A stretch of 64,000 bases of DNA. Origin: Paragordius varius. Its lineage: Eukaryota; Animalia; Nematomorpha. The notes under the pieces were generated by a model. That model ran no database searches. It saw nothing but the letters and a program-made list of their open reading frames with translations, and was not told the DNA's origin. The stretch's first letter is position 1. Each line of letters opens with the position of its first letter. The stretch spans positions 2,976,001 to 3,040,000 of the forward strand of contig OZ176053.1 of the NCBI GenBank assembly GCA_964247055.1, in the 5' to 3' direction. Positions 15,485-62,247 of the stretch are shown piece by piece. The position numbers and the translations under genes are program-made.

Positions 15485-18400
15485 TTATAATTTCGCATAA
15501 TGCGTCGGTTGAATATATAAGTATTCTTTTCCTGGTATTACTTTCATATCTAAAAATCAATTGAATATAAATAAGTAAATGCTAATAAGTGACAAGTATG
15601 AATGAGCTAAATAAAGCTCGGAAAACCAATTATTACCTTGTAAAAACAAATTTATTTAAAAAGTGAAAGATGAATCATATAAATTATGCATAAAAAGGGA
15701 TGATTTGTGATTGATATTTTTAAATCAGAATCATAAGATACAAACGGTTCAACATTACACAACCTCTTCGTAAAACATAAGACTCGGTATCATTTATAAA
15801 AAAATATTTTAAAATCCTCCTGTTTGTCAATAATGACTTCTAGAACGCTTATATAAAAAGGATAGAGTAAGATATCATACTTATATTTTGAGAATTATAT
15901 TTTTTATATTTTAGTATATAAACCTTAAAATCGCAAAATTTTTGCTAAAATTTATATTATAAATTTAATTATTTTACTATTAAACTCTGTGCCCCGGCAA
16001 ATTTTAAAATTTATAGGTTAAATTGGCATATGATAATCTTTTATGTATATTAAAAGCATGTAAAAGGATTTTACTAAGGTTCATCCTGATTTTTCAAATC
16101 CAAAATCAATTTTTTTCTACGTGGCTCTTTAATGCGCTCAAAATGTATTATTGCATTGTGAATCTCAATAAATTTTAATATAAAATATTCGTTTTCGTTA
16201 ACAATATTAACACAATTTATATATGTCTTATTTTTTTATTATAAAGACACTAAAAATTTACAAAAAATTGATAATTACTAGCTGGCCCTGTCACGCTTCG
16301 CTGTGACGTAGTCTAACCGATAAATATTCTTAATAATTGGCAAAAATAGAGGTAATGGAGATAAAAAAATAATAAACGTATTTAATAAAAAGAATATTTT
16401 TAATTATTCTTTTACGGGTTTTCGCATAGGCTTAAATATTGTTTACTCGCAATTGTCCATATTTAAACTGTCCCTTATTAAATTTAATATTCAACTATCA
16501 TTGGATTTATTTTAAAATTTTCGTTTTAGGAATCATGGTTAAAAGTTTTATTTTGAAATTGTGTTAGTTGGGATCAAGGGATATAAAAAGTAAATCATTT
16601 GTGTTCCCTTTTTAAAGGAAATAATGATATTATAAAAATTTCCCAGAAATTTTTAACTGAACTCGTATGGCTCCTTAAGTTTTTGAAAATGTCTCAGTTT
16701 TAAACCGGTAGACCCCTACGTATAGACCTAAATTGAAAAAAAGTCAAATTCTTTCCTTTATAGGGCAAATATTTGGAATTATCTTTGATACCATCATCTC
16801 ATAGGTTATTTGAAAAAATAACACAACACTAAAAATCGTTATATGGTGGCGTATTTTTAGGGCATAAAGGTCCCAAATTAACAGCTAATCAAAAACGCCT
16901 GACCTTTTTTACCTAGTTACGGGTAATATTTCAAGCTGGAGCTCATATGGCTTCATAAATTTTCTGTAAATTAGCTCCAGAACAACGCAATTTCTATATA
17001 GTGGCGCAGTTTTTGGCGGGTAGCTCCTAACACAGGGGTAGGTATAAAAAAGCTGTGGGGATTTGCCTTTATATGAGAATATCTGGAATTATCATGCATT
17101 CCATATGTTCCTATTAACATAGGTTTTCCGAAATTTGGCTCCAAAGGCATGCTGTATTGATATGATGACGCAGTTTTACACGGGTTCCCCCCTAACCAGG
17201 GGCGAAACAAAAAACGCTCGATTAACATTTTTGCTTTAATCCGGGTGACCTGGAACATGATTGATTCCATATGATCTCGTAAGATTTTCGAAAAATTGCC
17301 TCACCAAAAAGACATTCTATGGTGGCGCATATTTCATGGCAACAGCCTAATTAAGGGGTAATTTAATAAACCCCTTTACTTAAATTTTTGCCTTTTAACG
17401 GGTAATATTTCAAGCCTTTATTGAACTCCTATGGCCTGATAAGTTTTTTCAATTTGCCTCCAAAGTCATGCTGAATCGATATGGTGGCGCAGTTGTAGGG
17501 GGTCCCCTACACAGAGGCAAATATAAAAAATTTGGATAAAAATTTTTGCCTTTATAGAAGATTACCTGGAATCATCATTCATTCCTTATGATCTTAATAG
17601 TTTTTGGAAGAATGGCTTTCGAACTAAATAATTTAAGGATAGCGAATTTTTTAGGGCGTAAAAGGCTTAAATAACGGCTAATTAAAAAAAACCGCTAGAC
17701 TTAAATTCTTGCCTTTTTACGGGTAATATTTCAGGCACTTATTAAACTTATGTGGCCTGATAGTTTTTCTGTAAATTAACTCCTTAACAACGCAATTTCG
17801 ATATGGTGGCGCAGTTTAAGGCGGGTATCTCCTTACCCAGCCTCCAATATATAAAAAACGCACGACTAAAATTTTTGCCTTTTAACAGGGAATACCTGGA
17901 ATCCTTATCAAATTTCTCCGGTCTCATACCTTTGGCCAAAAATAAATTCAAAAAATATTTTTATGGACGTTTTTTGGAAAAAATGGTACCGGAAGAGCGG
18001 GTAAAAAGAGGGCCTAAATAAAAAAGCGAGCCGACTATGTTCGGCGCCATCGAAAAAAAGTAAAAAAATCATATTTAAAATTGAATGGTCCCACACGTTT
18101 TTCGGAAAATTGTCTCAAACACACGATTTTTGTGGACTCGTCTTTTCAAAAAAACCCCATTTTCTACAAGGGGTGGGCCCGAACTGGGGGCCTAATTCAA
18201 AAAAAGGCGAAGCTATTGTCGGGGCATTCATTAATGATTATATTTTTTCGACATTTGGATTTGAATGGGTCCACCGTTTTTTCGGAAACAGATCACAAAG
18301 CCACCAATTTCCATTTTTATAAATTGTTAGGCAAATCTGAAAGATATACTTTATTTTTATAATATTTTTCTGTGTTATATGCAAATGTGAAATACATACT

Positions 18401-21400
18401 TTGGTTATTATCATAACTTTCACCGTTATTTTGAATTGTATTATTTTTTATATTTTTTGTGTTATATGTAAATATATAACCTTTGTTACTTGAAATTTTA
18501 TTGATATAATGCAAATCATGGACAGTTAAAATTGCTATATATACACCTTAAAAAACCAAATAAATAGTTCAGTTCATTTTCACATTTCTTTTATTTATCT
18601 CTTATCTTAAAAGATAAAATAAATATATAGATTTCAGGTAATATTTAATGATAAGTTGTCAACGTAGTTTTTTTCATACTGTATATAACAATATATTTCC
18701 TATATCACTGCTGCTCAAAACATTTATCCCTTAATTTACATATTTTATATGATTTTTTCTATTAATATAACCAATCTGTAATTTTTATTTCATTAGTATT
18801 ATTGGACCATATTAAAAAGGTATAGTTCTATTTATAAATATTGGGTAATATTCGACGGTAAAATCATTCAATAAATCCCAATAATTTAATTTATTTAGCA
18901 AAATTGATTGTTCGCATCATAGCACTTCATTAAATAATATGCAACAAATTGCTATTGTTTATAAGTATTTATTATTGTGTTATATCTCTTTGATAATTTG
19001 ATATATCGCTAACATGTCGATATAATAAAGGCCACATAATTATTTTCACTCAGAGTTTCCAAAATCAGATTATTATTTGTTGTCATGTTTAGTAGGAATT
19101 TATCTTGATATTGAATATCAGGCAGTGATATTAAATGATCCATCACGTTAACCTCTATCGAATTATCGTCCTATTCATTATAGACATATATATATATAAA
19201 TATATGGATGAAATGGTGTTTTTCAAGTTACATAGTTTAATTAATTTGGTAAGTTCAAATAAATACACATGTGTTAAAATTTAATAGTTCAATTAAATAG
19301 TTATCAAATATTAAAAAAATCGATCATGTTACAATCTATGTTGTAAGATACCATAAAATATATTTATTTGCCAATTTTTAGCGATTGGACAAAACCAAAA
19401 AAATATAATATTCTGTAAAATGTTTGAGATTAGTTTAACATTTTATAAATATTGTATATCATAAAAATATGTACTGATAAATTATATATATTTTCATAAG
19501 AAAGGATATCAGAATTATCATGCTTCTTGTTTCGGCGCTTCCTATTAATGATTTAAGAGAGTTATTATTTACAGTTTTTTGCAGAAAATGGCATATTTGC
19601 GCACATTATGGTAAATAATTTTTTGATAGATAAATGATTTTATCCAAAAACTATCACTGAATAAAAAGCAAAATTTAGGTAAACTCTTATCTTTTTTCCC
19701 AGAGTCTCAGCCTATTGGACCAGATGGGCAAGTTCTCTAAACATAAAGGCAAAAAGGCGGAGATTGACGATAAAAACTTTATATGTATGATAATTTGACA
19801 TCAATAAAATTTTCCGAAAAAATATATATTTTGCTCAAAAATTTAATTTACATAAAAATTTTGGTACAGAGAGTTTTATGATATTTTGAGAGATGGTGGA
19901 AATAGTATAAATCTCTTTAGTACACTTTTTCATCAACTGAGTTTTAATTAAAAGGTTGACTTTTAATTGGGTAAATTTTTGTAAAATACAATTTAATTGA
20001 CAGAAATTTAAAAACGAACCAATATTTTTATTTAATTTAAAATTACTAATGTACAGCATCATTGAATAAAGAAAAATGATTTTATAATATTTTAAAGCGT
20101 ACCTATTCCATGATGCCTTATAAAATGTAGCATGATTTAAAAATTTGGCTAATAATTTTTAACCAAAGTATGAATCTTTTTCAAACATCCCATAATTTAG
20201 CTTATAAATAATTTAGTCGCGAATCTCTGCAATTATTTTAAAAAAATTTAGCAATTTAGAAAACCGATAAAATTTACGTAACCCATATGTAAAAATTACA
20301 TTTGCTTTTTAAATGTAATATATCATATATTTTGATGGTAATTTTTGAAATAAAGCATTTAGCTTTTACCAAAATATTTGATATAATGTGGTCTAATATT
20401 GCGATTTTTTGATGTGCAATTACCACAAAACTTCAAATTTATTATATCACTCATAAGCCGAAAAACCAAGAGCATCTAAGAATCATGATACATTTAGCTA
20501 TCAGAAATTGTATAATCAATATATTTTTTATATCCGATTTTGAAAGTATTTTCACACTTCATTACCTTTTAACTTTTTTGTTTTACCTTTTGGGGTAGTT
20601 TATCCCAGAGCTCAATTTGTAAAACTACTGTTTTGAAAGTTAATTTTTAAATTTAGATAAAAAAGCGATTATTTTTTACAGTTTTATGACTTCTTCGTCT
20701 GATGAGACAGCTCGAAAACACGATTGAAACGAACAGCTTATATTTAATAAACCTATATCAAGTTTTCCTGGTAAAATGTAGTCTGAAGATTAAAGTTAGT
20801 AACACTTTCTAACCATAATATACATTTATTTCCCTCTTGCATTGTCGATTTAAAAAAGTTTGTTGAAAAAAATGGCGGAAAAAAATTGAGGTGAGGATTT
20901 TTTTACAATTTTACATTTTTTAATAAAATATTTTTATAAACCGCTTAAAAATCTAAAAAGGCATATTTTTAGATTCGGATTAATACCTTAATTACTTTTT
21001 ATGATATTCAAATTTTAAATCGCTCTGTGATTTAAATTAATTCAAAAATAATGGAATTTTATGAGCTTAGAAGACTTGAATACATTTTATTTAATTTGGA
21101 CCAATAATGGAAACTTAAAATACTTATATTTAAGATCGCTCTGGGGTATTAAACCATAAAAACTGAAGTAATAAATAAATACCTGTGTATTTCCATACGT
21201 ACGTTCTTCACAAATTTCTTTCAGACTATCATTATCAGTAATATAACAAATGATTAACCGTAATTCCTTGTTGAATTTCAAAACGTAATGACCCTATAAT
21301 AAGTATTTGAGATTTTAAGGCACTGAGAAAGAAAAGATTTTAGTTTAAATAGGTTTTATTGCCTTTAAAGATATATTTCAATAAGAGATGCGATAATTTG

Positions 21401-24400
21401 AGTAAAAATTATACAATTATAATACACATATATAAACCGGACATTCATTCTTTAAAATCTTTTAATAATTGCTAAAGTAATATATTTTTTCATTTATACT
21501 GGAACGGTCGGAATATTGGTATTGAAAAAACTTAAATCATTAGGATTATAGGTGTATTTCCAAATTTTAAGATAATAAACAGTAGTAAAAATTGTGAATA
21601 AACAGAATTAATTTTTTTCCATATATATACTACATAATACAATTTTCAATATGAAAAAACTTACATTAAACCAAAAATCTCGAATATTATTGTATGTTAA
21701 TAATGCTTTAAACAAATCTTCGTTGGGTGCATATGACAAAAGATGTGGCTTATTTTGGGTAAGGTTCATGTAGACTAATCCATAAATATGGTTATTTTTC
21801 TTTGATAATGTGACATTCCTAATTTTATTAATATATATATATATATATTATATGATTTATTTAAATCTAATTTCTAAACATTTACTTTAACCCTTATGGG
21901 TCGTCAACACAAACAGCTTCTCAAATCGCATTTGATTCAAAAATCCGGCGAGCCGCATATAAATAGTATATCACATATATTTACTAATTATTAATCAATG
22001 TCCAAAACTGTAAGATTTTTTGCAGATAATTTACCATTTAAGTTAGCTTTTACGCCTTTAAACTTAAAAAATTAATGCATAGAGTATTTATTCTTGTAAA
22101 GTCTACATATGTTATTTAATCGACATATAATGGTTAGGTTAGTTATTAATGACATAATACAAATAATTTAAATTGGCGAAAAATGTCAATTTATTTAGTA
22201 TTTGTAATATTTAAAAATGACGCAAAATTGCAAATTTAGAACTTAGATTATATTTTGGTTTAGGAAATTTCAATCGTGGGGATGTTAGACTCTGCTCTAA
22301 TATGCCTAGCTCTAAAATCTAATTAAATAAAAAATAAAAGGGAAAATTAATAAAACCTGGCATTATATCGGTTATCTATAAGCAACTGCGAAACAATTCC
22401 TGACAAATTGTCGATTTTGCACCAATCCTTGTATAATAAGGTATCATCGATGAAATTCATTTGTTGGAAAGCTAATATGTTTAAAAAATCGACATTTTTA
22501 TAAACATAATAAAGAGTTGCTAAAATACTATTTAGTTTTCCGATTAATCAATATCTATTTGTGTAACATGAAAATTAGTTGTAATAACCTTATAATAAAA
22601 ATGAATATCTCGTTGTTTTCGGTTCTTTACACAGTGTTCATAAAAAAATAAACTGATAAAATATAAATCTTCTGATATGAAAATATATGAGAATTTTCAT
22701 GGTGCTTTTGGTTTTGGCCCTAACGAGTAATATAAGAGAGTTATTTTCACTTTTGTGGCAAGTGCACCTTATCAGAAAAGGGCAAAATTTTTGCACATAT
22801 TTAAATAATTTTTTTTCAACCAATGCTATATGCTCCATTCCAAAAAATATCACTAAAATATATTTTGAACTACATATAAAAAGCAAAACATTATTTTAAA
22901 AAAATTATAATTTTTAGATGTCGGCTCCCAACGTTTCAAGTTTTTCGCTCTTCTAAAATAGCCTAAAACAGATGAAAAAATGCCTTGCGGGATAAAAATT
23001 TTGCATATATGCTAAATTTAGATAACAACTAAAAATATTTTTTAAAAAAACTTTTTTCAAAATATTTTTTTGAAAAATTTTGTTGAAACGTAGTTCATAC
23101 CATTTTGAGGCATTAGGGAAACGATATATGAACGCTTTAAGACATTTTAAAAATACCTTTTCTACATATTTTGATTGAAACATTTGTTTGTCTTCAAAAT
23201 TAGGTTCACTCAAATTTGTGCTATTTACGAAAATTAACCAATATTTTATAGCAAACGAAACTTTTATTTTGGACGAAGTGTTATGATGATCTAAAATGTA
23301 GTTTGCGATAATGTATATCAATTTATTGATTAAAACCTTATATTTTAATGAGCTCATCAGGAGTTTTTTAAAAGTTTTTATCTATAAAACTGATAATATC
23401 ACATACGAAGAGCTCCTGGACTATTTATCCTTTATAAAACTTAATATATTTAACCATACCAACACAATCACACAAATAAAAATTAAAAATAATTTATAAA
23501 CGTAGTGTATGAAATCGGGGTTTTATATAATATCTTGATAATATATACATCTCATAAAACCGTCGAGATTATGGTGCATTTCTGGAGACCTATGAGTCAT
23601 TTAAAGATCACAAAGTCGCAAAATTAGCCCACTTTATGGTAAATATGTTTTTAGCTCAGGCATACTTGATCCTAAAAAGTTAATATTAAAATATAGTATA
23701 AGCTATTTTAAAAAGTTATATGACCAGGTGTAGTCATAAATCTTTTTTAGTTTTTAAAGGGAAATTAATTATATATTTTTAACACTTCGATTCAAATTGG
23801 GGTATCTAAATACCCCAAACTACATTTGAGTTAGGCTTTTTAAAAAAAATACTGAAGCAAACGGTCCCAATTTAAATTTATGCTTCTTTATTAATATAAA
23901 TTATATAAATATGCCAAAAAATCTAAATAAAATTTTGTTTTGAAAAAAATGTTCCATGTCAAACTACTTCGACGCCATTTTTATTTTACAAAATTTTTGC
24001 AAAATATCGTAGTCATTTAATTTTAAGGGTAAAATTAAAGCAAATTTTTTATTTAAATTATATTTAACATTGATAGAAATAGAAAAAGCGGTTAATTTTG
24101 TATTATTTTCAATTACCATTGCACACATGTCACGTTGACTAAATAATAAAAACTTTTTTTATATATTTCGGTTTTTAATGTTATATAAGTGCAAACTTTT
24201 GCCATGATTTCAATTCTTACCATATTTTTAAAGAATTTAATTTTTAATAGGCCTGGGGTATTTAACTACCCCAATTTGAATCGAAGGATTAAAATGAATG
24301 TGTTGTATCCAATTGTTAAATACTGTCCACCGGCTACATTTTTGCCAATCTTTGGGTATTAAATGAATGCTATGCCAGTTTGTGGCAAACCATTCGAGCC

Positions 24401-27400: not shown

Positions 27401-30273
27401 TAAAAATATTTGTAAATAAATATCAAATAATGTATAATACAATCTTTTTAAAAAAACATGACTTTATTAGTAAAACGCAAGTGTCATTCGAACATTATTT
27501 TGACAATCCAATATCGCAGGATACTAAATTAAGTAAAAAGTGGTCATGACCATAATCTAACTGGGTCTGACCGGACTTTTTTGAAAAAGCAGTCAAATGC
27601 ACAACCCTATTTATACCTTATATACTATTAAAGATATTTTAATTTTGAATCGCTCTGGGATATAAAACTAACCCCAAAAGTCACAAAGTGTTAACAACGT
27701 ATGCATTTTTTAAGTTTTTTTAATCATAATCAAAAATATATAAATTTCATCGCGCAAAGCTTAATTCAAAGAAAACGAGCCCAAAGCGACCAAAAATTTG
27801 AGAATTTTAAAGCCCATATCTAAAATTTAAACTAATTAAAAATACTTATTTTTTTAAAATGTAGTTTGAAACTTATATTCAGCATAATATGCGCTAATTT
27901 TGCGATTTTTTTATATGGGTCAATTAGTTAAAAATGGTATGTAATCAACTTAAATTTAAGGCCCAAAACCAGTATGAGAATCCTGATATGTTTACCTATC
28001 AGAGCATATATATTTCATCAAGTACAGTGTTTATAAAATGATTACAACTTATTAAATTTAATATTTATCAAGTGTTTGAACTTTATTCATATTTGATAAA
28101 AATACTTGTTGAAATTTCGGTATTAAAGGTGTTTTCCAAGGCTTCCATTTTCATTATATATGTTAAGGTGAAAGTATAATTGGCAGTATAAGCATTAACA
28201 TATTGGTGACATGTATTATTTTCTGGACTGAACGGAATTATCTAAAATAGAAACAAATAGAAATAACTGCTTGTTTACTGAAGAAGTTGAAAAAAGAATC
28301 GTTTATAAATGTTTTAACAAATCAATATATTTTCAATCGGTTATTATTTTGTATAAACACTATATTTAAGATACTCTTTTATTATAATAATAAATATGCG
28401 TGTTTTAAAATTATTGTGGTAAGATAACCAAACACTAACTCTTCTTTCCAAATTTTAGATCAAAGCCCCTACTATAGCAAATCGTTATGTGTAAATCTGT
28501 TGTGAGTCTTTTCTAATTTTAGTAAAGTCAAAGGCTTAATCCTAACAAAACCAAAATATTATGTACAGGAAAAAAGCCTACAATTATAATAGAAGGAGTA
28601 GAAATAGAAATAGTTAAACAGTTAACGTTTTTGGGCGCAATAATTTCAGAGGATGGGTTTTCAACTCCTGACATTAGAAAGAGAATAGGATTGGGTAGAG
28701 AAGCGATGACCAAATTAATAAAGATTTGGAAAAACAAAAGCGTAGGAGTTGAAACCAAAAAAAGATTACTCTACTGTTTCGTTCTCCCGGTCACCACATA
28801 TGGATGTGAGAGTTGGATTCTCAGAAAAAAGGACAAAGAAAGGCTCATGGCTTTTGAAAGGAGTTGCTGGCGTAGGATGTAGGATACGCCTGGAAGGATA
28901 AAATTAAGAATGAAAATTTAACTACAGAAATAAAACCTAAAACAAACATCATGGAGATAATTCTAAAAAGAAAGTTAACATATTTTGGTCATGTCATGCG
29001 ATCGAATTCTCTGGAGAAAGATACAATGTTTGGGAAGGTAGACGGGCAAAGGAAACGAGGCCGACCACCGATGAGGTGGTTGGATATGATAAAAGAAGAG
29101 ACCAAAATGACACTGAAAGAGCTCAATATAGCGGTTAAAGATAGAAAAAAATGGAAAGAAATAGTTAAAACTATATCCAAAAAGTCGTTTACGACTTAGG
29201 AAAAACCAACCAACCAACCCATGAAAGATTTAACACTGGTTTGCCCCTGCGGAGAAATGTTAAGGTTCGAAAAAACTGTTTTTTCAAAAACATACAAATT
29301 AGCCCTCCCTACTCTAAACAATCACTCTACTTTAAATAAAATTAGCAATCAACGAATATGAAGTAAACTAAAATAATATCATTGACCTAAAGCACATTTA
29401 ATATTACATTAAACATTGAGCGGGTTCTAGGTTCAATTATAAAAAAATAAAAAATATACCTGAGTTTCGTTAAAGCATGGTTTGACATTTTCATAACATC
29501 TTTTCATTGTTAAGGAATAAGTGACTTGAGCTGTCAAATAGGACGTCCAGCATACATTTATGTTTTGGTTATTCGAATGCGCATTTATCGTTAATTGTGA
29601 ACTATTAACTATAGGTAAAAAATGTATAAGTCAAAACGGGTAATGGTTATAATTTTCAACACACTATTAAAATAAAAACATAAAAATTGAGAACTATGTG
29701 CGAATTCGTCGTTAAAGATCCAAATATCCATAAGCCATGAATACACTTTATATTCAAATTTCCTCAAGTTAAGAATTTTAATTTCTGTTTATTGGACATT
29801 CGGAAATCGACAAGTGTAAAACCCTATTTCCGATTTTCAGAACCGTATTTATCTTTTCGATTCCTAAAACGTTTTTAAACCAATAATTGGTCGCTAACAC
29901 AGTCATCATACATACAGAACCATTTTGGATAATACAGTAGAAATTATACGGACAAAACGTAAAAATATAAAGACAAATATTTTTAATCTTTACACAATCA
30001 ATTCTATATTTTACAATTAAGTAGCTTATATGGATAACATTGAGGTTTAAAGTTAGATAAAAATATTTGTCTTTATATTTACATGCCCGTATAATTTCAA
30101 TTTTTCTGTATTCGGAATTCTTTGATAATTTAAAATATAATCTATTTTTTAATTTAAAACAATCTAAATCATATGGATTAAATAAAACTATTCATATGTT
30201 TACCTTTTGTGGCATGAAGATATAGTTGGATATGACATGATAGTATTAATGCCAAATATATTTTTGAATTCAT
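15485..30273 (-). CDS. Unannotated secreted glycoprotein, copy A (~318 aa, FN3-like N-terminal domain). Exons: 30273-30204, 29608-29460, 28241-28106, 22471-22357, 21818-21665, 21293-21183, 19170-19014, 15549-15485
   Basis: Eight AG/GT-bounded open exons with phases 1,0,1,2,0,0,1 that chain without a stop (957 nt). Exon 1 is signal-peptide-like (MNSKIYLALILSCHIQLYLHATK). All exons are also open and splice-compatible in the paralog. Skipped additional exons are possible; the last exon is the least certain. Confidence 0.75.
16276..18325 (+). mobile_element. DINE-1/Helentron-associated (Helitron2-type) non-autonomous element with central tandem repeats; partial minus copies ~12757-14560, ~35775-36835, ~54575-55470, ~55712-56170
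   Basis: 5' end TACTAGCTGGCCCT followed by hairpin GTCAC-GCTTCGCT-GTGAC. 3' end with a CCGG-TTTT-CCGG stem-loop and ...TTTTATAAATATATAGAT terminus (clearest at 54575). About ten ~150-165-bp internal repeats. Confidence 0.7.
25411..26058. mobile_element. TA-target MITE family D (other copies 26362-~26465, 62838-63209, 63514-64000)
   Basis: TIR TACCATTTGCACTTCAAGAGTGTCC plus 21-bp tandem units CACTTCAAGTTGGTCCTTGAA. TA duplication shown by the empty site near 30894. Confidence 0.85.
26834..27609. mobile_element. hAT-type MITE (family E), 776 bp
   Basis: TIR TAGGGTTGTGC; perfect TSD TTTATACC; subterminal GTCATGACC repeats; nested in a piggyBac-like MITE. Confidence 0.9.
28532..29218 (+). mobile_element. 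5'-truncated copy of the same RTE element
   Basis: Nearly identical to ~42.26-42.94 kb (a handful of substitutions, one 1-bp deletion). (CAAC)n tail. The empty site is visible at ~61310-61325 in the paralogous block. Confidence 0.95.
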
Positions 30274-32261: not shown

Positions 32262-32367
32262 TTGTGCATCCATACGTATGTTCTTCAGAAATTTCGTTCA
32301 GACAATCAACATCAGCAAGAAATATTTTTAACCGTAATTCTGCGCTGAATTTCGAAACATAATGACA
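32262..32367 (-). pseudogene. Diverged remnant of exon 6 of the duplicated secreted-protein gene (third copy)
   Basis: Translates CHYVSKFSAELRLKIFLADVDCLNEISEEHTYGCT versus GHYVLKFNKELRLIICYITDNDSLKEICEERTYGNTQ. Its acceptor side abuts the hAT element starting at 32371. Confidence 0.65.
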
Positions 32368-32370
32368 ATA

Positions 32371-34785: not shown

Positions 34786-35178
34786 CACTAGGGTGCGGCC
34801 CTAACCATATTTTAATTTGATGGATGCTTACTAAATTTAACGTTTAAACATTGAATACTTTAACCTATTATAGATTGCATCAAAGTTATGCTATTATTTT
34901 GTTCTTTTTTTCAGGCGTGAGGCCAAAACAGGAGCAAAAGAGCGTTAATAGCTTTAACCTAATATTAAAAATAATTAAAACCATTTTACAAATTTGGTTT
35001 CATAAGTTTTCCAAAATTAAATTGTGGCGCATTTTACAGAGTGTAGATATCTGCATAGCCGCTAATTTAAAAAACTTCAGACTAAATGTTTAGCCCTTAT
35101 ACCAGGGGCTTAAACCATGATTGTTTTTACATGGTCTTATAGCGGTTCCGAAAAGTTGCGTTAAAGCCACGTTATCTT

Positions 35179-35453
35179 CAGAGGCGTAGCTTGCATTTCT
35201 GGCGCCTGGTGCATGAATCCATGATGGCGCCCCTCCCCCTCCATGCAACCCTTTGCATTCTAAAAAATTAATCATATTCAAACCATGGTCATGACAACTC
35301 ATATATGGATTTTTATCTATTATTAAAAATAATAGCTTTTAAAAACCTATTTTTATGAAATAAAATTAATTTTTTTAAATCCGGCTCCCCTTCAACTATG
35401 GCGCCCGGTGCATCAGTCTACCTTTCCACCCCCCCCCCCCCCATACGCTTCTG
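35179..35453. mobile_element. hAT-type MITE, 275 bp
   Basis: TIR CAGAGGCGTA/TACGCTTCTG; perfect 8-bp TSD GTTATCTT. Confidence 0.85.
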
Positions 35454-52100: not shown

Positions 52101-55100
52101 TTTTCTAAAATACAATTTATGTTTAAATATAAATTGCAAGACGAACCAATATTATTTAAATTCTGAAGTAATAATGTTTAGAATCATCGGATTAGAAAGA
52201 AAAGGGGTTTTATAATATCTTGCCGTTTTCATGATGCCTTAAAAAGTATGTAGTATGATTCAATAAAGTTTTCTTAAAAATTTTTATCCATAGTATGCAT
52301 TTTTCAAAAATATTTATTCTAGCTTTAATTAAATTGTCACGAACTGCATTTTTTATTTAAAACGAATTTAGCAATTTAGAAAGCTGATAAAATTTGATTA
52401 CGCAATCCACATGTAAAAATTAAATTTTATAAAAGTATTTTGCTTTTTAAATGTAGTATATCATATATTTTGAAGGTATTTTTTGAAACAAAGCACTCTA
52501 CTAAAATATTTGATATAATGTGGTCTAATTTCGCGATTTTTCGATATTCAATTACCACAAAACCTCAATTTATTATATCACTCGTAACCCGAAAAACCAA
52601 GAATAATACATTTATATCAGAATATATATAATCAACATATTTTTTATATCCAATTTTGAAAGCAGTTTCACACTTCATTACCGTTTTACTTTTTTGTTCT
52701 AGTTTACCTTTTGGGGTTTATATTCCCAAAGGTCGATTTCGTAAAACTACTGTTTTGAAAGTTAATTGTATCAGTTAAAAAGCTCATATTTTTTACAGTA
52801 GATTGAAACCACGATTGAAACGAACAGCTTATATTTGAATAAAAATATATCAAGTTTTTCCTGGTAAAATGTAAAAAGCTTCTCAAGGTTAATATTATCA
52901 TGTATACCATAATATATATTTATTTGCCTCTTGCATAGTCAATTTAAAAAAGTTTATTGAAAAAAATGGCGTCAAAAAATGTAAGGATTTTTTTATAATT
53001 TTACACTTTTTAATAAAAATTTTGTATAATGCGCCTAAAAAACTAAAAAAGCATATATTTAAATTAGGTTTAATACCCTAATTAATTTTTAAGATATTCA
53101 AATTATCGCTCTGTGATGTAAAATTACTTTAAAAGTAATGAAGTGTTAATGAACTTAGAAGATTTGAAAACCTTGGCCCACCAATAATCGAAAGTTTAAT
53201 TTACTTATATTTAAGATCACGGTATTAAACCATAAAAATTGAAGTAATAAATAAATACCTGTGTATTTCCATACGTACGTTCCACACAAATTTCTTTCAG
53301 ACAATCATTATCAGTAATATAACAAATCTTTAACCGTAATTTCTTGTTGAATTTCAAAACGTAACGACCCTATAATAAGTATTTAAGATTTTAAGGCACT
53401 GGGAAAGAAAAGATTTAGTTTAAATAGGTTTTATTGCATTTAAAAAATAATTTGGTAAGAGATGCGATAATTTAAGTATAAGTTATAAATTATAATACAC
53501 ATATAAAAACCGCAAGACATTTATGTTGTAAAATCTTTCAATATTTAATAAAGTAATATATTTTTATTAACATTTATAGCTTGAAATGGTTGGAATCTTG
53601 GTATTGTACAAAAACTTAAATCATTGGTATTATAAGTGTATCTGGGTTGTGCATTTGACTGCTTTTTCAAAAAGGTCCGGTCAGACCCAGTCAGACCATG
53701 TTCATGACCACGGTCATGACCACTTTTTAGTTGAGTAAGTATCATGCAATATTGGATTGTCAAAATAATTTTCAAATTACGCTTGCGTTTCACTAATAAT
53801 GTCCTATTTTTCTTAAAGGTTTGTATTATACATTTTTTTGATATTTATTATTTACAAATATTTTCAATTAAATTTAATCAAGAAATTTGTTTTCAAATAA
53901 ATTTTGCCATATGTTTATGGTTTTTGAATCAAGAATTACATTTTTAATACTCAATATTTCAAATAAAAATTTACCTAGTTTCACTTTCTTTATCATTAAA
54001 TTATTGGATGTTTTTCATTTTATTGGTTCACATATATGGAATTACATATGCAAAGGGCTTGATTGTTTGGTTTTTCGACATAACTGGATATCCTTAAATG
54101 CTAATGATATAAGGATGCATGTTTAACAATTTTTAATATATTGTTGAATAAGCATATTTGAATATTTTTTTTTAAAAAATATATTAAAATAATTTTACTA
54201 TCTTTCTTTCAAAAAAATACTATCAATTTTTCAAAGAACAGCTGTTTTTTGAATGACCATGGTCAAAAATAAATAGTCACTGACCTGGTCATGACTTGGT
54301 CAGCACAACCCTAAGTGTCTCCCCAAAAGATTTTACACAGTAGTTAATTGTGATTAATAAATAGAATCAATTTTTTACCATATTTACCATTTGCAATTCA
54401 AATTCACCCTTGACCAACTCAACCACCGAACAATTCGAATTCACCCCTGAACAATTCATATTCACCCTAAAAATAAATTATGTGTTTTCGAGATATATAA
54501 ATCATCATTAATATGAAATATATTTTTACGACATAGTTTATTATTTTATTAATTTTAAAAAGAATTTCATATTTAAATCTATATATTTATAAAAAGAAAG
54601 TGGTGGCTTTGTGATCTGTTTCCGGAAAACCGGTAGACTCATTCGAATCCAAATATCAAAAAAATATAATCATTAATGAATGCCCCGACAATAGCTTCGC
54701 TCTTTTTTTGAAATAGGCCCCCAGTTCGGGCCCATCCCGTGTAAAAAACGGTTTTTTTGAAAACAGCAGTCCACAAAATCGTGTCTTTGAGACAATTTTT
54801 TGGAGAACCTGTTGGACCATTTAATTTGAAATATGATTTTTGTTTACTTATTTTTGATTGCGCCGAACATAGTCGACTCACTTTTTTATTTAGGCCCTCT
54901 TTTTACCCGCTCCCCCCAGAAAATGCCATTTTTTTCAAAAAAAATTAGGTCCACAAAAATAATTTTTTGAATCTATTTTTCGCCCAAAGTATGAGTCCGT
55001 AAAATTTCAATAAGGATTCCAGGTATGCCCTGTTAAAATGCAAAAATTTTAGTCAAGCGTTTCTTTGATGATAGCTGCTGGGTAAGGAGATACCCGCCAA

Positions 55101-56605
55101 AAACTGACCCGTAGTATCAAAATAGCGTGCCTTTGGGGCTAAATTTCAGAAAACCTATCAGTTCATATGAGTTCAATAGCTGCTTAAAGTATTACCCGAT
55201 AAAAGTCAAAAATTTTAGTCGAACGGAATTTTTGAATTAGCCGTTAAATAGGCCCTTTACTCCCTAAAAAAGGCGCTATCATTGCACTATTTAGTTTTGA
55301 AGCCATTCTTCCATAAACTATTAGGAATGAACGATGACTCCAGGTATAAAGGCATAATTTCTTATCTAACTACATTTATATTGGCCTCTGGGTAGGGGGC
55401 TACCCGCCTAAAACTTCGCCATCATATCGATACAGCATGCCTTTGGAGCCAAATTTCAGAAAACTTATGAGACTATGTAAATCATTTTAAAACTTCGTGC
55501 CTTATAACAAAATTGCTCATAAAATCAAAAATATATTATGCTCATTTTAAATAAAATTGTCTATCTTAATATTCAAACGACACAATGATCAATCAGACTT
55601 TATTGATTTTAAACATAAAATCGTATTAGGTTATTGTTTTATTATTTATTTATCTATTATATGTATAGGATGTTAAAAAATATATGGATAATAAAACATT
55701 ATTTATGGTAATCATATTTATAAAAATGGAAAGTGGTGGCTTTGTGATCTGTTTCCGGAAAACCGGTAGACCCATTCAAATCCAAATGAAATAATATAAT
55801 CATTAATGAATGCCCCGACAATTGCTCACCCTTTTTTGAAATAGGCCCCCAGTTGGGGCCCACCCCGTGTGAAAAACGTTTTTTTTTGAAAACAGAGTCC
55901 ACGAAGTCTTTGAGAAAATTTCCGGAGAACGTGTTGGACCATTCAATTTCAAATATGATTTTTGTTACCTTATTTTCGATTTCGCGGAATATCGTCGTCT
56001 CGTTTTTTAATTTAAGCCCTCTTTTTACCCGCTCCTCCCGTAATATGCCATTTTTTTCAAAAAAACAAAATCCGCAAAAATAATTTATTGAATCTATTTT
56101 TCCCCCGAGTAAATAATTATTAGTATAAATGCACCGTTTTAAAATTCCTATGAGATCATAGCTATTAAATAATTTTCAAAATAATCCACATGTGTGGATT
56201 TTATTGTCCCTTTTTTCAAATAGCCCCCCCTCCCCCAGAAATCCAGAGATTTACGCTAGTAATATTATAAAATAAAGTTATTTTTTAATTTTGAAAAACA
56301 CCTAATTATATTAAGGTGAACTTGAATTGTTCGAGGGTCAAAATGAATTGTTCAAAGGTGAATTTGAACTGTTCAAGGGTGAATTTGAATTCTAAATGGT
56401 ATATATACTACATGATACAATTTTCAATATATAAAAACTTACATTAAACCGAAAATCTCGAATATTATAGTATGTTAATAATGCTTTAAACAAATCTTCG
56501 TTGGGAGAATATGACAAAAGATGTGGCTTATTTTGGGTAAGGTTCATTTTAACGAATCCATAAATATGGTTATTTTTCTTTGATAGTGTGACATTCCTAA
56601 TTTTA

Positions 56606-56647
<42 letters not shown>

Positions 56648-58415
56648 TAATTTAAATGTAATGTCTAAAAGATTTACTTTAACCCTCTATACGGATTGTC
56701 AACACAAACAGGTTCACGGATCTCATTTATGACTCAAAAAATCCGGCGAGTCGCATATAAATATTATATCAAAATATATTTACTAATTGTTTATCAGTGT
56801 CCAAAACTGTAAGTTTGGTAGACAATTTACCATTTATTACGCCTTTGCACTCAAAAAATTGATGCATAGAATTTTTATTCTTGTAAAGTCCTGCTATTTT
56901 ATTTAATCGACATAATTGACTTGTTACGTTTACGTGTTCGTCAAACATAATTTTTTATGCATGTGATTATATAACGAAAATGTTACAATTTTTATATATT
57001 CTAATAAAATTATGTAAATACCCCTAACGAGCAATTGATGGTCTTTTACGATATATTTTATGAGGATAAATTCTCGGAAGAATTATAATAAAAATAAAAT
57101 TGGCCAAAATTGTCAATTCTTATTTTTAACTATTAAAAAATGTCGCAAATTGCAAATTAGAACTTTGATTATATTTTAGTTTAGAAATTTTCAGCCAATA
57201 TAGAGCACTTCAGATTTTGCTCTAAACGCATATGCCTAGCTCTAAAATCTAATAAAAATTAAAGAAAATCAAAATTAAAACCTGGCATTATATCGGTTAT
57301 CTATAAGCAATTGCGTAACTATTCCTGACAAATTGCCAATTTTGCACCAATCCTTGTATAATAAGGTATGATCGATGAAATTCATTTGTTGGAAAGCTAA
57401 TATGTTTTTAACGAAATTCTAAATTTTCATAAATATAATAAATAGTTCTGCTAAAATACTATTTAGCTTTCCGATTAATCAATATCTATTTTAACCTTAA
57501 AATTAGATTGTAATATTATAATAAAAAATGAATATCTCGTTTTCGGTTCTTTACACAGTGTCCACAAAAAAATAGACTGATAAAATATAAAACTTTTAAT
57601 ATATGTATGAGGATTTTCATGGTGCTTTTGGATTTGGCCCTAACGAAGAGTTATTTTCCTTTTTGTGGCAAATTCACCATATTTGCACATAATTTTTTTC
57701 GGCCAATGCTATATGCTCCATTTTAAAATATCATTATTAATTATGAACTAAATATAAAAAGCAAAACAATATTTTTAAAAAATTAAAATCTCCGAAAGTT
57801 CCAAGTTTTTCGCTCTTTTAAAATAGCCTAATTCTCTTAAAATACAAGAAAAAATGCCGAGATTGCGGGATAAAAATTTTGCATATATGCTTTATCAAAT
57901 AAAAATATTTTTTTAAAATACTTACTTTTGTCAAATTACAAAATTTTGTTGAAGCGTACTTTATACTATTTTGAGGCATTATGGAAACGGTACAAAACGC
58001 TTCAAGACATTATAAAAACATTTTTCTATAAATTTCGATGCTGAACATTTCTATCACCTCAGATTTTAATTAAAATATTCGTTTGTCTTCAAGATTATGT
58101 TAAATCAAATTTATGTTTTTTTACGAAAGTTGCCCAAAATTTTATAGCAAACGAACCTTTAAATTTTGGACGCAGTGTTATGATTGAAATGCAGTTTGTG
58201 AATCAAGTTAATGGCTAAAACTTTAAACTTTATAGCTCATCAGGAGTTTATTATTTTTAAAGCTATTTATCTATAAAACCGATATATTCGAAGCGCTGCT
58301 GAAACCATTTTATATTTTATAACACTCACTATATTTAACCATACCACCATATTCACACTAATAAAAATTAAAAAAATATTAAGTGTGGGAAATTGGGGTT
58401 TTATATAATATCTCG

Positions 58416-58449
<34 letters not shown>

Positions 58450-61400
58450 ATAGAAAACCATCAAGATTCTTAGCGTGCATTTCTTGAGCCGAGTCATTTT
58501 ACAAAGTTAGTTCCACTTATGTGGTAATTGGTTTAAATCAAAAAGTAATTACACATTTTGCTAAATATTTTTTTAGTGTAAGCAATCCAAAAATTTTATA
58601 TTAACACTTCGATTCAAATTGGGGTATCTGAACCCCAGACTATATTTAAGTTGATAATTTAAAAAAACTACTGAACGAAACGGTCTTAATTTAAATTTAT
58701 GCTTCTATCCTAATAAAAATTATATAAATAAGCCGAAATAACTAAATAAAATTTAGTTTTGAGAAGCTCCATGTCAAACTACTTCGACGCCATTTTTGTT
58801 TCATAAAATTTTTGCAAAATACCGTGTCAATTTATTTTTAAAGATAAAATTAAAACTAATAAATCACATCTAACATTAATAGAAATAGATAAAGTGGTTT
58901 ATTTTGTATTTTCAACTTAACAAATGCACACATGTCACGTTAACTAAATTACCTTTGGGATTTACCTTAAAATAAGTAATATTAAATATTATTGATTAAA
59001 AGTTTTTATATATTCCAGTTTATTAATGCTATATGATTGAAAAATTTTGCCATGGTTTCGATTCCTTCCATATTTTTAAAAAGTTTAAATTTAAACAGGC
59101 CTGGGGTATCCAACTACCCCAATTTGAATGGAAGGACTGAAATAAATGTATAACCAAGTGTTAAAATACATAATAAACTATTTTAAAAAATTATATTGAC
59201 CAGTAATAGTCTTTTCTTATTTTTAAAGGAAAATCAATAATATATTTTATATTGACCACCGGCTTCTAAAATTTTTTCCAATTAATGGATGCTATGCCAG
59301 TTTTTGTGGCAAACTATTTGAGCCATTTCCCAACGTCTTACAATTTAATAAAGTGCTGCTTTGCCGCCAGCATGTACATTGATGCGAAAAGGTAATACCC
59401 ATTTGGCCCTGTAGGGGAAGATGCGGAAATAATTCCCATCACAACGCTTTTAGTTTATTTCACTGGCTTTGCTGTGTGAGATGGAGTGTTATATACTAAA
59501 ACTAATTTAAGTTGTATTTAACTTCTAATGCAAGGCTATTTTAGAAAAATACACGTATTTAAATTCAATTCAAAGGCGATATAAATTTTATTAAAAATCT
59601 GAGGTAATAAATGTTCAATATCATCGAATTATGTAGAAAATTTATAATTTCTTATACCGTTTGTAACATGCTATCATATACGCTTGACAAAATTTGCCAA
59701 AAATTCAATTAACACTTCATGACCTTTTCCTTTATTGTCGGCTGTGACACATTAGGGTAGTTTTATATCCCAGAGCTGAATCTTGTAAAAAAACTACTAT
59801 TTTGAAAGTTATTTTTGTTAAAATTTTAATATAAAACATTGTTATCCTGTTTAGAAAAGAGCTTATATTTTTTAAATTTTTTAATTTCTAGATAAATTGG
59901 GACAGCTCCAAAACATGATTGAACAACAGTTGATTTTGAAATTAATAAATATGAACTTTTTAATGGTAAAATTCAATCTGAAAGCTTACTAAAGTTTTTA
60001 TTAACAATTCTAGGATTAATATACATTTGCCTATTGTATTTGCGATTAAAATAATATAGAAAAAAATTGCGGTGAAAAACTTTGAGTGAATAATTATCAA
60101 TTTTATATTTTATTGAAAATAATTTTTTGTATTATGTGCCTTGCATATTTTTATATTCGGCCTAATATGTTTAAAAATATTCGAACTTCGAATATCTGGA
60201 TAAAATCACCCAAAGTCATAAAGTGCTAACTAGGTATGCATTTAATCATAAATATTTTTTTACATCATAACAAACATATATTAAATTTAATCGCGCAACG
60301 CTTAATTCAGAGAATAGAATTTCAAAGCCCAAATCTAAAAATAAATATAAATACTTATCTTTTTTGTAGTTTATATATATTATATTGAGAGTTTCTGGAT
60401 TAATGCTAGAAAAATTTATTTGGCATAATATGCGCTTTGCGGTTTTTTGTATGGGTCATTTAGTTTAAAAATTTATGTATTTTACTCTAATGCAGGGGTG
60501 TCCAACACAATATCTTCGCGGATGCTTTGATAATTTTTGGGTTTTTTTTATTTATTTTAAGCCCAATTTTGGATGGATGTATCTTCTATATAATCGTAAA
60601 TTTTAGATTAAATTCCAATTTTTATTTTTAAACATTTTTTGAGAGCGCTTTTGCGTACAAAAAAAATCGTGTTGGGCATCCCTGTAATGTAAGGCTCAAA
60701 ACCAAAAGCACTATAAAAATCCAGCTATGTTTACCTATCAGAGCATTAATATTTTATTAAGATGTTTTTTGTGAACGTCATTACCCTTCTGTACACAACC
60801 ACACTGTTTACAAAAAGATTATAACTTATTTTACATTTAATATTTATCACTGTTTAAACTTTATTCATATTTGATAAAAATACTTGTTGAAATTTTGGTA
60901 ATAAAGGTGTTTTCCAATACTTCCATTTTGATCATATAGGTCAAGGTGAATGTATAATTGGCAGTATAAGCGTTAACATATTGATGACATGTATTATTTT
61001 CTGGACTGAATGGAATTTTCTACAAAAGAAATAAATAGAAATAATATCTGCGTGTTTACTGAAGAAGTTGAAAAAGGAAATGTTTATAAATATGTCCCAA
61101 GAAAACCAAACTATTTGCAATCGGTTATTATTTTATATAAATGCCAAATTTAAGATCATCTCTTTTTATAATAATAAATATGCGTGTTTTAAAATTATTG
61201 TGGTAAGATAACCAAACATTAACTCTTCTTTCCAAATTTTAATTAACCCCCTACTTACAACAAATTGTTATGCCGAATAGTTGTGGAACTTTGAGTGTTA
61301 TTAGTTAAGTAAAGTTAACCCATGAAAGCTTTAACACCGGTCTGCCCCTGCGGAGAAATGGTAAGAATCGAAAATACTGTTTCTTTAAAAACATACAAAT

Positions 61401-62247
61401 TATTCCGTCCCTACTCTAAACAATCACTTTACTTCAAATAAAATTAGCAAACAATGAATATGAAGTAAACTAAAATAATATTATTGACTTAAAGCACATT
61501 TAATGTTTCATTAAACTTTGGGCGGGTTCTAGGTTCAATTATTCAAAAATAAAAAATATACCTTAGTTTCGTTATAGCATGGTTTGACATTTTCATAACA
61601 TCTTTTCATTGTTAAGGAATAAGTTACTTGAGCTGTTAAATAGGACGTCCAGCATACATTTATGTTTTGGTTATCCGAACGCGCATTTATCGTTAATTTT
61701 GAACTATTAGCTATAGGGGAAAAATGTAAAGTTAAAAAATAAAACTGGTAATGGTTATCAGTACACTCTCTATTAAATTTTTCTCTAGAAAAACATAAAT
61801 AAAATTATGAATTATGTGAGAATTCGCCGTTGACCCAAATATCCATAAGCCATGTAAGTGGCTCAAAATACGCTTTATAGAATTTAATTTTTTCCAAAGA
61901 ATTTTAATTTTTGTTATTTGATATAATGGAGGACATTCGGAAATCTACAAGATATATAAAACCCTAATTATCCCGATTTCCAGAACCGTATTTATCTTTT
62001 CGATTCCTACAAAAATATTCTTAAAATAAATATTGGTCCCTAACACAGTCCTAATATATAGAGAAACATTGTAATAGATTAGAAATATTCTTTGATAACT
62101 TAAAAATAAAATATTATTTTTTTATTTAAAAAAACAATCTAAATCATATGGATCTAATAAAAGTGTTCATACGTTACCTTTTGTGGCATGAAGATATTGT
62201 TGGATAAGACATGATAGTATTAATGCCAAATATAGTTTTGAAATCAT
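37142..62247 (-). CDS. Unannotated secreted glycoprotein, copy B (~315 aa). Exons: 62247-62178, ~61710-61562, 61019-60884, 57396-57282, 56596-56443, 53369-53259, 43170-43014, 37197-37142
   Basis: Same exon sizes and phases as copy A (70,149,136,115,154,111,157 nt; last exon 9 nt shorter, in frame). Synonymous changes are concentrated in exons 3-4, e.g. IPFSPENNTCHQYVNAYTANYTFTLTY is identical as protein with 6 silent changes. Signal peptide MISKLYLALILSCLIQQYLHATK. Confidence 0.75.
40052..42936 (+). mobile_element. Near full-length RTE-clade non-LTR retrotransposon; single APE+RT ORF 40123-42921 with two in-frame TAA stops (40786-88, 41851-53)
   Basis: APE motifs (GCWNVRSL, GDWNSKVG, NQIDYI, SDHELL), RT motifs (GVRQGCCLSPYLF, LRFADD) and the RTE C-terminus (YFGHVMR...GRPPMRWLD). 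The three ORF-track pieces share one frame. (CAAC)n tail. Confidence 0.95.
40065..40105 (+). promoter_or_regulatory. Candidate RNA pseudoknot in the RTE 5' UTR
   Basis: GAGGG(40065-69)/CCCTC(40087-91) interleaved with TGGCA(40077-81)/TGCCA(40101-05), 18 nt upstream of the ORF ATG. Confidence 0.5.
44371..45479. mobile_element. Tc1/mariner-like non-autonomous element inserted in the old RTE
   Basis: Imperfect TIRs CACT(AG/GC)TC(G/A)ACAA...GCACCACC with TA on the left. Interrupts the RTE frame between GIDN and IPLELI. Faint Tc1 HTH-like remnant inside. Confidence 0.6.
46993..49715 (-). mobile_element. Buster/Charlie-type hAT DNA transposon with transposase 49337-47528 (GTF2IRD2/SPIN-like), two -1 slips in T-runs
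   Basis: TIR CAGGGGTGGCCA; perfect 8-bp TSD ATATATAG (46985-92, 49716-23). BED finger, LDESTD, TTDGAPAM, HCIIH, VRWLS, STYLCESAFS. Confidence 0.95.
50184..51447. mobile_element. Foldback/palindromic TA-target MITE (~1.26 kb)
   Basis: Whole element is an inverted repeat (arms ~600 bp, short loop near 50.81 kb). Ends CACTGTGTGCAAAAAAGAGGGTCAT; flanked by (TA)n. Confidence 0.85.
53643..54313. mobile_element. hAT-type MITE (family E), inverted relative to 26834 copy
   Basis: Homologous to 26834-27609; TSD AGTGT(A/C)TC; empty site near 21550. Confidence 0.85.
60493..60684. mobile_element. Small hAT-like MITE
   Basis: TIR CAGGGGTGTCCAACAC / GTGTTGGGCATCCCTG; absent from the paralogous site (~27950); TSD imperfect (TAATG). 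Confidence 0.7.

What the first reader, a model, noticed from the sequence alone, without database searches (positions are those of the whole stretch)
15485..62247. Hidden tandem pair of genes for an unrecognised secreted FN3-like glycoprotein
The apparent gene desert appears to encode two paralogs invisible to the ORF track. Copy A reads MNSKIYLALILSCHIQLYLHATK-VNSSQLTINAHSNNQNINVCWTSYLTAQVTYSLTMKRCYENVKPCFNETQ-IIPFSPENNTCHQYVNAYTANYTFTLTYIMKMEALENTFNTEIST-TFQQMNFIDDTLLYKDWCKIDNLSGIVSQLLIDNRYNA-RNVTLSKK...RDFWFN-GHYVLKF...YGNTQ-DDNSIEV...FIIST-YMKVIPGKEY...KL*. It has a signal peptide, a beta-rich first domain with FN3-like W and Y-x-F pattern (inference), about nine N-glycosylation sequons and no transmembrane helix. 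Frames, phases and splice sites are preserved in both copies although the introns are full of indels and differ by >10 kb of TEs. I do not recognise the family; it may be a lineage-specific secreted effector or ligand-binding protein.
Basis: partly seen in the sequence, partly recalled or inferred. Interest (0 to 1): 0.82.

Follow-up and report, generated by a model that had tools for sequence, protein, structure and literature searches.

The report
Unannotated secreted glycoprotein gene family
The "gene desert" holds two real split genes, part of a five-gene family, that appear to encode a roughly 298-residue secreted, sugar-coated, disulfide-bonded protein with no detectable relatives elsewhere; this is a real but fairly ordinary lineage-specific family, and its function is still unknown.

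Summary
The tandem pair is real. Copy A (19009-30273) and copy B (43009-62247) lie on the minus strand. Each has seven GT-AG exons and an 897-nt reading frame (298 aa).

- **Exon conservation:** exons are 90-96% identical between the copies, against 81% for the aligned non-exon DNA. They carry no indels in 897 columns, against 28.5 per kb outside.
- **Family size:** three further paralogs exist, two just beyond the window and one on another contig. Phases and eight cysteines are conserved. dN/dS is 0.21-0.46.
- **Junction check:** the distant paralog has exons 6 and 7 fused in one open frame, which confirms that junction without RNA data.
- **Last exon rejected:** All five copies end Cys-stop in exon 7. 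A, B, C and D then share a short 3'UTR with an AATAAA signal.
- **Protein features:** signal-peptide-like start (seen in A, B and D only), 6-9 N-glycosylation sequons, no transmembrane stretch.
- **Relatives:** Pfam, PDB, two word searches, a 1.84-billion-protein HMMER search and two metagenome scans found none.
- **Fold:** "FN3-like" and a ConA/LamG-like C-terminal half remain weak leads.

The joined spliced model was neither searched nor folded. This is an orphan secreted family of modest interest.

The parts
30204..30273 (-). Copy A exon 1: ATG plus signal-peptide-like 23 codons, phase-1 donor G|GTAAAC
   Evidence: 94.2% identical to B. Homologous start (MNS..., hydrophobic core) in paralog D.
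29460..29608 (-). Copy A exon 2: first half of the N-terminal beta-rich domain, 3 conserved Cys, invariant VCW
   Evidence: 94.7% identical to B.
28106..28241 (-). Copy A exon 3: second half of the N-terminal domain, 1 conserved Cys, YTFT.TY motif
22357..22471 (-). Copy A exon 4: DWCK cysteine and conserved NLS sequon
21665..21818 (-). Copy A exon 5: the exon best conserved with the distant paralog E (63% aa identity)
21183..21293 (-). Copy A exon 6: 2 conserved Cys
   Evidence: Fused to exon 7 in paralog E.
19009..19170 (-). Copy A exon 7, terminal: conserved NMT sequon, ends Ser-Thr-Cys-stop (TAG 19009-19011)
18882..19008 (-). Copy A 3'UTR, conserved with B, C and D, ending in AAATAAATTAAATTA (18882-18896) 113 nt after the stop
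62178..62247 (-). Copy B exon 1
61562..61710 (-). Copy B exon 2
60884..61019 (-). Copy B exon 3
57282..57396 (-). Copy B exon 4
56443..56596 (-). Copy B exon 5
53259..53369 (-). Copy B exon 6
43009..43170 (-). Copy B exon 7, terminal, ends STC-stop
39625..42943 (+). 3.3-kb insertion with APE and RT open frames (non-LTR retrotransposon). It splits copy B's conserved 3'UTR about 62-65 nt after the stop. B's copy of the AATAAA motif now lies at 39566-39580.
15485..15556 (-). Rejected as an exon.
   Evidence: 79.4% A/B identity equals background. It has a 9-nt indel and its upstream flank is better conserved than the 'exon' itself. It is absent from paralogs C, D and E.

Best explanation
The region holds two members (A and B) of a five-gene, taxonomically restricted family. 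Each gene has seven exons (six in the distant paralog, which lacks intron 6) and ordinary to long, TE-filled introns. Each encodes a protein of about 298 residues. That protein has a cleavable-looking signal peptide, then a roughly 95-residue beta-rich module with four conserved cysteines (exons 2-3), then a roughly 180-residue beta-rich module with four more (exons 4-7). The last of these cysteines is the C-terminal residue.

Shown here: the genes are real, intact and under purifying selection, and the family grew by local tandem and inverted duplication. A/B is the youngest pair (dS 0.11).

Inferred: the product enters the secretory pathway, is N-glycosylated at 6-9 sites (three sequon positions are kept in all five paralogs), and is locked by four disulfides. 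One of these probably ties the start of the second module (the DWCK Cys) to the C-terminal Cys.

Most likely role (inference, about 40%): a soluble extracellular binding protein made of an Ig/FN3-like module followed by a lectin-like jelly-roll module. It would act at the animal's surface or in its surroundings. If the genome is a horsehair worm's, as an earlier untested note says, those surroundings could include the insect host.
For: - **Exon versus background:** 90-96% against 81% identity, and zero indels in 897 exon columns against 28.5 per kb outside (P=8e-12).
- **Family:** five paralogs have open E2-E7 frames, conserved GT-AG sites and conserved phases.
- **Independent junction check:** the exon 6/7 junction is confirmed by natural intron loss in paralog E, which has one 94-codon ORF.
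- **Selection:** dN/dS is 0.21-0.46, and dN differs from dS at Fisher p 0.016 to 2e-19.
- **Protein features:** eight invariant Cys and conserved sequons; hydrophobic N-terminus with a conserved MNS start in A, B and D; no TM-grade hydrophobic window.
- **3' end:** terminal Cys-stop in all five, plus a conserved 3'UTR and AATAAA in A, B, C and D.
- **Family size:** exactly five members by profile search of the genome.
- **No relatives:** Pfam, PDB, word searches, 1.84-billion-protein HMMER search (33-35), metagenome scans (43, 44).
- **Weak fold leads:** ConA-like/LamG for exons 6-7; fn3/Ig-like for exon 2.
Against: - No transcript or protein evidence of any kind is available here.
- First exons of paralogs C and E were not found, so a signal peptide is shown for only three of the five.
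- The signal peptide was judged by eye and by hydropathy, not by a trained predictor.
- Copy B's 3'UTR is interrupted by a young retrotransposon, so B may be impaired.
- Fold leads are below the tools' reliability lines, and the only fold attempt gave pLDDT 40.
- Absence of relatives is weak evidence. Only exon-sized queries could be used, and the databases evidently do not hold this genome's own genes.
Confidence: 0.65

Rival explanations
1. It is a highly diverged member of a known extracellular architecture: a true FN3 (or Ig-like) domain followed by a ConA-like/LamG-type lectin domain. On this reading it is not a new family at fold level.
For: The language-model search gives ConA-like/LamG clusters as top hits for exons 6-7 (0.88), and fn3 and Ig-like clusters for exon 2 (0.83 and 0.77). 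hhalign aligns exon 2 in register with strands A-B of genuine FN3 domains of this genome, Trp on Trp. The terminal Cys plus a Cys near the module's start resembles jelly-roll domains closed by an end-to-end disulfide (my own knowledge).
Against: All these scores are below the tools' stated reliability: recognition 1773 and 1796 against the 2300 that most known families reach, and hhalign probability 7.5%. Exon 3 shows no FN3 signal. Pfam and PDB profiles give nothing even at E=10.
Confidence: 0.2
2. One reading: exon 7 splices from ...ACA T|GTTAG to a last exon at 15485-15556 (B: 37145-37198), adding about 21 residues.
For: A phase-compatible GT follows the Thr codon and an AG precedes the small ORF in both A and B. 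B's 9-nt deletion there is in frame.
Against: A/B identity in the 'exon' is 79.4%, equal to the 80.8% background, while every other exon is above 90%. The 110 nt upstream of it are better conserved than it is. Nothing like it lies downstream of exon 7 in paralogs C, D and E. Cys-stop is conserved in all five copies, followed in A, B, C and D by a conserved 113-126 nt segment that ends in AATAAA and then loses similarity.
Confidence: 0.05
3. The copies are unexpressed or decaying duplicates (pseudogenes) that merely have not yet accumulated lesions.
For: No expression data. No first exon was found for C and E. A TE sits in B's 3'UTR. A/B dN/dS is 0.46, with exons 6-7 above 1 on very few changes. 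Relic exon fragments lie nearby at 32263-32364 and 35722-35772.
Against: Five copies diverged up to dS about 1.5 with all E2-E7 frames open, all splice sites intact and dN/dS 0.21-0.43 on the older pairs. Zero exon indels against 28.5 per kb in flanking DNA.
Confidence: 0.07
4. The coding pieces belong to a transposable element or an endogenous viral glycoprotein gene rather than to a host gene.
For: The region is TE-rich, and the protein is an orphan glycoprotein.
Against: There are only five copies genome-wide, four of them in one cluster. Six conserved spliceosomal introns have conserved phases. There are no terminal repeats and no adjacent RT or integrase that belongs to the unit. The RT/APE frames are separate, younger insertions absent from copy A at that position.
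Confidence: 0.02

Closest known systems
Fibronectin type III domain (Pfam PF00041) proteins
   Same: The exon 2-3 module has about the right length (~95 aa) and alternating beta-type hydrophobic patterns. An invariant Trp in exon 2 aligns with the FN3 strand-B Trp in hhalign. There is a Y-x-F-x-L-x-Y stretch where the F-strand tyrosine corner would lie. An fn3 cluster appears among the language-model hits.
   Different: No Pfam match even at E=10. hhalign probability is only 7.5% for exon 2 and nil for exon 3. The module has four conserved cysteines, including an adjacent Cys-Trp, which is not an FN3 feature. Genuine FN3 domains of the same genome score 42-68 bits in the same kind of six-frame search.
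Concanavalin A-like lectin / laminin-G-like jelly-roll domains (PF02210, PF13385)
   Same: The exon 4-7 module is about 180 aa and looks beta-rich, as far as a low-confidence model shows. The top language-model neighbours of the exon 6-7 piece are ConA-like/LamG clusters. The predicted location is extracellular.
   Different: The score of 0.88, with 94-112 shared features, is below the tool's reliability line. There is no Pfam or PDB sequence match. The fold is not established (pLDDT 40).
Taxonomically restricted, tandemly duplicated secreted cysteine-rich glycoprotein families of invertebrates and parasites (generic class; my own knowledge)
   Same: Small family in a local cluster. Signal peptide, conserved cysteines and many sequons. 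No homologs outside the lineage. Moderate purifying selection with faster-evolving stretches (exon 5 omega about 0.9-1.2 among cluster paralogs).
   Different: No expression, localisation or interaction data. At 298 aa with two modules it is larger than typical small cysteine-rich effectors.

Membership tests
FN3 (PF00041) | Significant match to the family HMM | tested here: not met
   hmmscan of every exon of copies A and E at E<=10 gave no fn3 hit. Each exon is only half a domain, so power is low.
FN3 (PF00041) | Profile-profile similarity, in register, to genuine FN3 domains | tested here: inconclusive
   Exon 2 profile against 10 FN3 domains of this genome: 20 columns in register, Trp on Trp, P=0.0046, probability 7.5%. 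Exon 3 gave no alignment.
FN3 (PF00041) | Seven-strand beta-sandwich fold | not testable with these tools
This needs the joined exon 2-3 sequence.
ConA-like lectin / LamG (PF02210, PF13385) | Significant match to a family HMM or to a solved structure's sequence | tested here: not met
   Pfam and PDB searches of the 93-aa exon 6-7 piece and of the exon profiles gave nothing.
ConA-like lectin / LamG (PF02210, PF13385) | Jelly-roll beta-sandwich fold | tested here: inconclusive
   AF2 of the exon 6-7 piece gave pLDDT 40.3 and is unusable. There is only a language-model lead at 0.88.
Zona pellucida domain (PF00100); considered because of the eight conserved Cys | ZP-N/ZP-C cysteine spacing, a C-terminal propeptide with a cleavage site and a membrane anchor, and an HMM match | tested here: not met
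   No Pfam hit. The first four Cys span only about 41 residues. The protein ends at the eighth Cys, with no hydrophobic tail. The comparison of spacing rests on my own knowledge of ZP domains.
Secreted N-glycoprotein (generic) | N-terminal signal peptide, no TM helix, conserved sequons, even number of conserved Cys | tested here: met
   Hydrophobic N-terminus in A, B and D. Maximum KD19 is <=1.44 everywhere. There are 6-9 sequons, three positions kept in all five copies, and eight invariant Cys. No trained signal-peptide predictor was available.

The most novel reading that the evidence does not exclude
The family is a lineage-specific secreted lectin-like binder that the animal releases to interact with another organism. 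An earlier, untested note takes the animal for a parasitic horsehair worm, in which case the partner could be its insect host, through immune evasion or manipulation. The fold may not be related to any known family.
Probability: 0.12. Interest if true: 0.65.

Novelty: new member of a known kind. Interest (0 to 1): 0.3.

Why it matters
The finding shows that an apparent gene desert in an unannotated, very AT-rich animal genome holds a small cluster of intact, selected genes. It also supplies corrected seven-exon models that an annotator could use. Orphan secreted glycoprotein families are common in poorly sampled phyla, so the existence of this one is not surprising. It would become interesting only if expression data tied it to a specific stage or to host contact, or if the full-length fold proved new. 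The natural intron loss in one paralog is a useful RNA-free validation of a splice junction.

Tried and rejected
rejected.
- **Internal repeat between exons 4-5 and 6-7:** suggested by a MAFFT misalignment. hhalign gives probability 0.2%, so it was rejected.
- **The two hits of the 1.84-billion-protein search (P0001, P0002):** both are long repeat proteins. Many short repeat matches to different parts of the query add up to the score, and one looks like cadherin-type repeats. Rejected as homologs.
- **Mixed full-length and fragment alignment for a longer profile:** MAFFT misplaced the exon 6 fragments, so the single 93-aa natural ORF was used instead.
- **AF2 of the exon 6-7 piece:** pLDDT 40, so no fold search was run on it.
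- **First exons of paralogs C and E:** not found by tblastn, nhmmer or a signal-peptide/donor scan.
- **CAGCTG motif:** None of the six window matches lies in a family exon.
- **Literature searches for hairworm secreted families:** nothing relevant.
- All searches used single exons, exon alignments, or the naturally fused exon 6-7 frame of paralog E.
Full report
**Setting.** The window is G000:C4:2976001-3040000 of a 110.5-Mb, 44-contig assembly. GC content is 21-35%. An earlier, unchecked note of this scan (s1-252886) takes the genome for a horsehair worm (Nematomorpha). I did not test that. Upstream of the finding lie a Med27 gene (8191-9210) and a Ser/Thr kinase gene (9477-10802), both on the minus strand.

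Self-comparison shows a colinear duplication, A 15256-31310 against B 36822-63428, broken by large insertions.

Along the chained A/B alignment, the seven exons E1-E7 are 90.4-95.6% identical. The 8832 aligned non-exon bases are 80.8% identical (63-nt windows: SD 9.8%; only 18% reach 90%). There are no gap openings in the 897 exon columns, against 264 in 9278 non-exon columns (28.5 per kb; Poisson P=8e-12).

Every intron is GT-AG. The phases (1, 0, 1, 2, 0, 0) are the same in both copies. True exon bounds of A are 30204-30273, 29460-29608, 28106-28241, 22357-22471, 21665-21818, 21183-21293 and 19009-19170. The lengths sum to 897 nt, which is 298 codons plus the stop. B has the same exon lengths.

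**More copies.** Six-frame searches of the whole assembly with exons 5 and 2, and then with five-sequence profiles of exons 2, 5 and 7, find exactly five loci and nothing else above noise:
- A and B, in the window.
- D, at C4:3048698-3056362 (+).
- C, at C4:3060885-3069901 (-), convergent with D.
- E, on another contig, at C3:10273824-10278960 (+).

All have open E2-E7 frames with the same splice sites and phases.

In paralog E, exons 6 and 7 are one uninterrupted 94-codon frame (L017:2679-2960). Intron 6 is absent there, and the junction reads exactly as the spliced model of the other copies predicts. This is evidence for that junction that does not depend on RNA.

Pairwise Nei-Gojobori estimates over about 274 codons give dN/dS of 0.21-0.46:
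- A-B: dS 0.11.
- A, B, C and D among themselves: dS 0.35-0.43.
- Any of these against E: dS 1.2-1.6.

dN differs from dS at Fisher p=0.016 (A-B) down to 2e-19. These are real genes under purifying selection.

**The last exon.**
- A/B identity is 79.4%, the same as background.
- It contains a 9-nt indel, and the 110 nt upstream of it are better conserved than it is.
- No counterpart lies downstream of exon 7 in C, D or E.

Instead, all five copies read Ser-Thr-Cys-stop at the end of exon 7. In A, B, C and D the stop is followed by a conserved segment that ends in AAATAAATTAAATT 113-126 nt downstream, after which similarity is lost. That is the pattern of a terminal exon with a short 3'UTR and a polyadenylation signal.

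In B this 3'UTR is split 62-65 nt after the stop by a 3.3-kb insertion (39625-42943). The insertion carries endonuclease and reverse-transcriptase frames, so B's conserved signal now lies at 39566-39580.

**The protein.**
- Exon 1 gives M-N-S, a hydrophobic core and a small-residue site (..LHA|TK) in A and B. D has a homologous start.
- No first exon could be found for C or E.
- Eight cysteines are invariant in all five paralogs: three in exon 2, one each in exons 3 and 4, two in exon 6, and the C-terminal residue.
- Copy A has nine N-x-S/T sequons; the others have six to eight. The sequons before the exon 3 Cys, in exon 4 (NLS) and in exon 7 (NMT) are kept in all five.
- No 19-residue window exceeds Kyte-Doolittle 1.44.
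- Together these point to a secreted, glycosylated protein with four disulfides. The signal peptide was not scored with a trained predictor.

The joined sequence was never built for a search or a fold.

| Search | Query | Result |
|---|---|---|
| Pfam at E<=10 | all exons of A and E | nothing of note |
| PDB sequences | 93-aa fused exon 6-7 piece; profiles of exons 2, 3, 5, 7 | nothing below E=0.2 |
| Word-index search, 5.8 billion proteins | exon 6-7 piece; exon 5 profile | nothing |
| Full HMMER search, 1.84 billion representatives | exon 6-7 piece | two hits, E=1e-5 and 3e-4 |
| JGI metagenome contig scans | exon 5 and exon 2 profiles | no relative |

The two HMMER hits are long repeat proteins whose many short repeat matches add up. 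They hit different parts of the query, so I do not take them for homologs.

Absence of relatives carries a caveat. Only exon-sized queries were possible, and the databases evidently lack this genome's own genes.

**Fold leads.**
- The language-model search places the exon 6-7 piece nearest to ConA-like/LamG clusters (0.88). It places exon 2 near two unnamed clusters, then an fn3 cluster (0.83) and an Ig-like cluster (0.77). Recognition scores are 1773 and 1796, below the 2300 that most known families reach.
- I built a profile from ten genuine FN3 domains of this genome. hhalign aligns exon 2 residues 4-24 in register with FN3 columns 4-23, Trp on Trp, but at only 7.5% probability. Exon 3 gives nothing.
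- AlphaFold2 on the exon 6-7 piece with its small alignment gave pLDDT 40.3, strands only, and is unusable.

"FN3-like plus lectin-like jelly roll" is therefore a reasonable guess and nothing more.

**Interpretation.** The best-supported reading is a taxonomically restricted five-member family of secreted two-module glycoproteins that expanded by local duplication. I favour an extracellular binding role (about 40%). The grounds are the domain-like layout, the glycosylation, the disulfide that probably closes the second module end to end, and the faster-evolving second half of exon 5 among the clustered paralogs (omega about 0.9-1.2 on about 26 changes). None of this is tested.

**Verdict.** Orphan secreted families are common in unsampled phyla, so interest is modest.

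Noticed in passing
window 39625-42943: A 3.3-kb insertion with APE (40123-40788) and RT (40966-42921) frames splits copy B's conserved 3'UTR 62-65 nt after the stop codon. It is flanked by ATATT on both sides. One end carries A21 on the gene (minus) strand although the frames are on the plus strand, so the insertion may be composite.
   Followed up: partly
window 28532-29217 vs 42253-42939: A 687-bp segment in copy A's intron 2 is 98% identical to the 3' end of the RT-bearing element behind copy B. This looks like a young, 5'-truncated copy of the same retrotransposon.
   Followed up: no
window 32263-32364 (-) and 35722-35772 (+): Relic exon fragments lie between copies A and B. One is exon 6-like (60% aa identity, both Cys lost). 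The other is a weak exon 3-like piece on the other strand. They suggest a further, decayed copy.
   Followed up: partly
copies A and B, exons vs introns: Synonymous divergence in the exons (dS 0.11) is about half the divergence of the aligned introns (19% mismatches, about 0.22 corrected). This may reflect constraint on synonymous sites or exon-limited gene conversion. Earlier notes on this genome propose DNA exchange between exon copies.
   Followed up: no
L017:2679-2960 (G000:C3:10278679-10278960): Paralog E has lost intron 6 precisely, so exons 6 and 7 are fused in frame. The other four introns seen in E (2 to 5) are retained.
   Followed up: yes
window 43349-51572: An 8.2-kb insertion in copy B's intron 6 carries several ORFs, including one with a Spin-doc-type zinc finger (PF18658; 48744-49337, minus strand). 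It is probably a DNA transposon and is absent from copy A.
   Followed up: no
window 8191-9210 and 9477-10802 (-): A Med27 gene and a 441-aa protein kinase gene each appear as a single uninterrupted ORF next to a family whose genes have kb-sized introns.
   Followed up: no
exon 5 of paralogs A, C, D (window 21665-21818 and L013/L014): Exon 5 has dN/dS of about 0.9-1.2 among the clustered paralogs, while the other exons are at 0.1-0.7. The changes look concentrated in its C-terminal third (by eye). Counts are too small for a test.
   Followed up: partly
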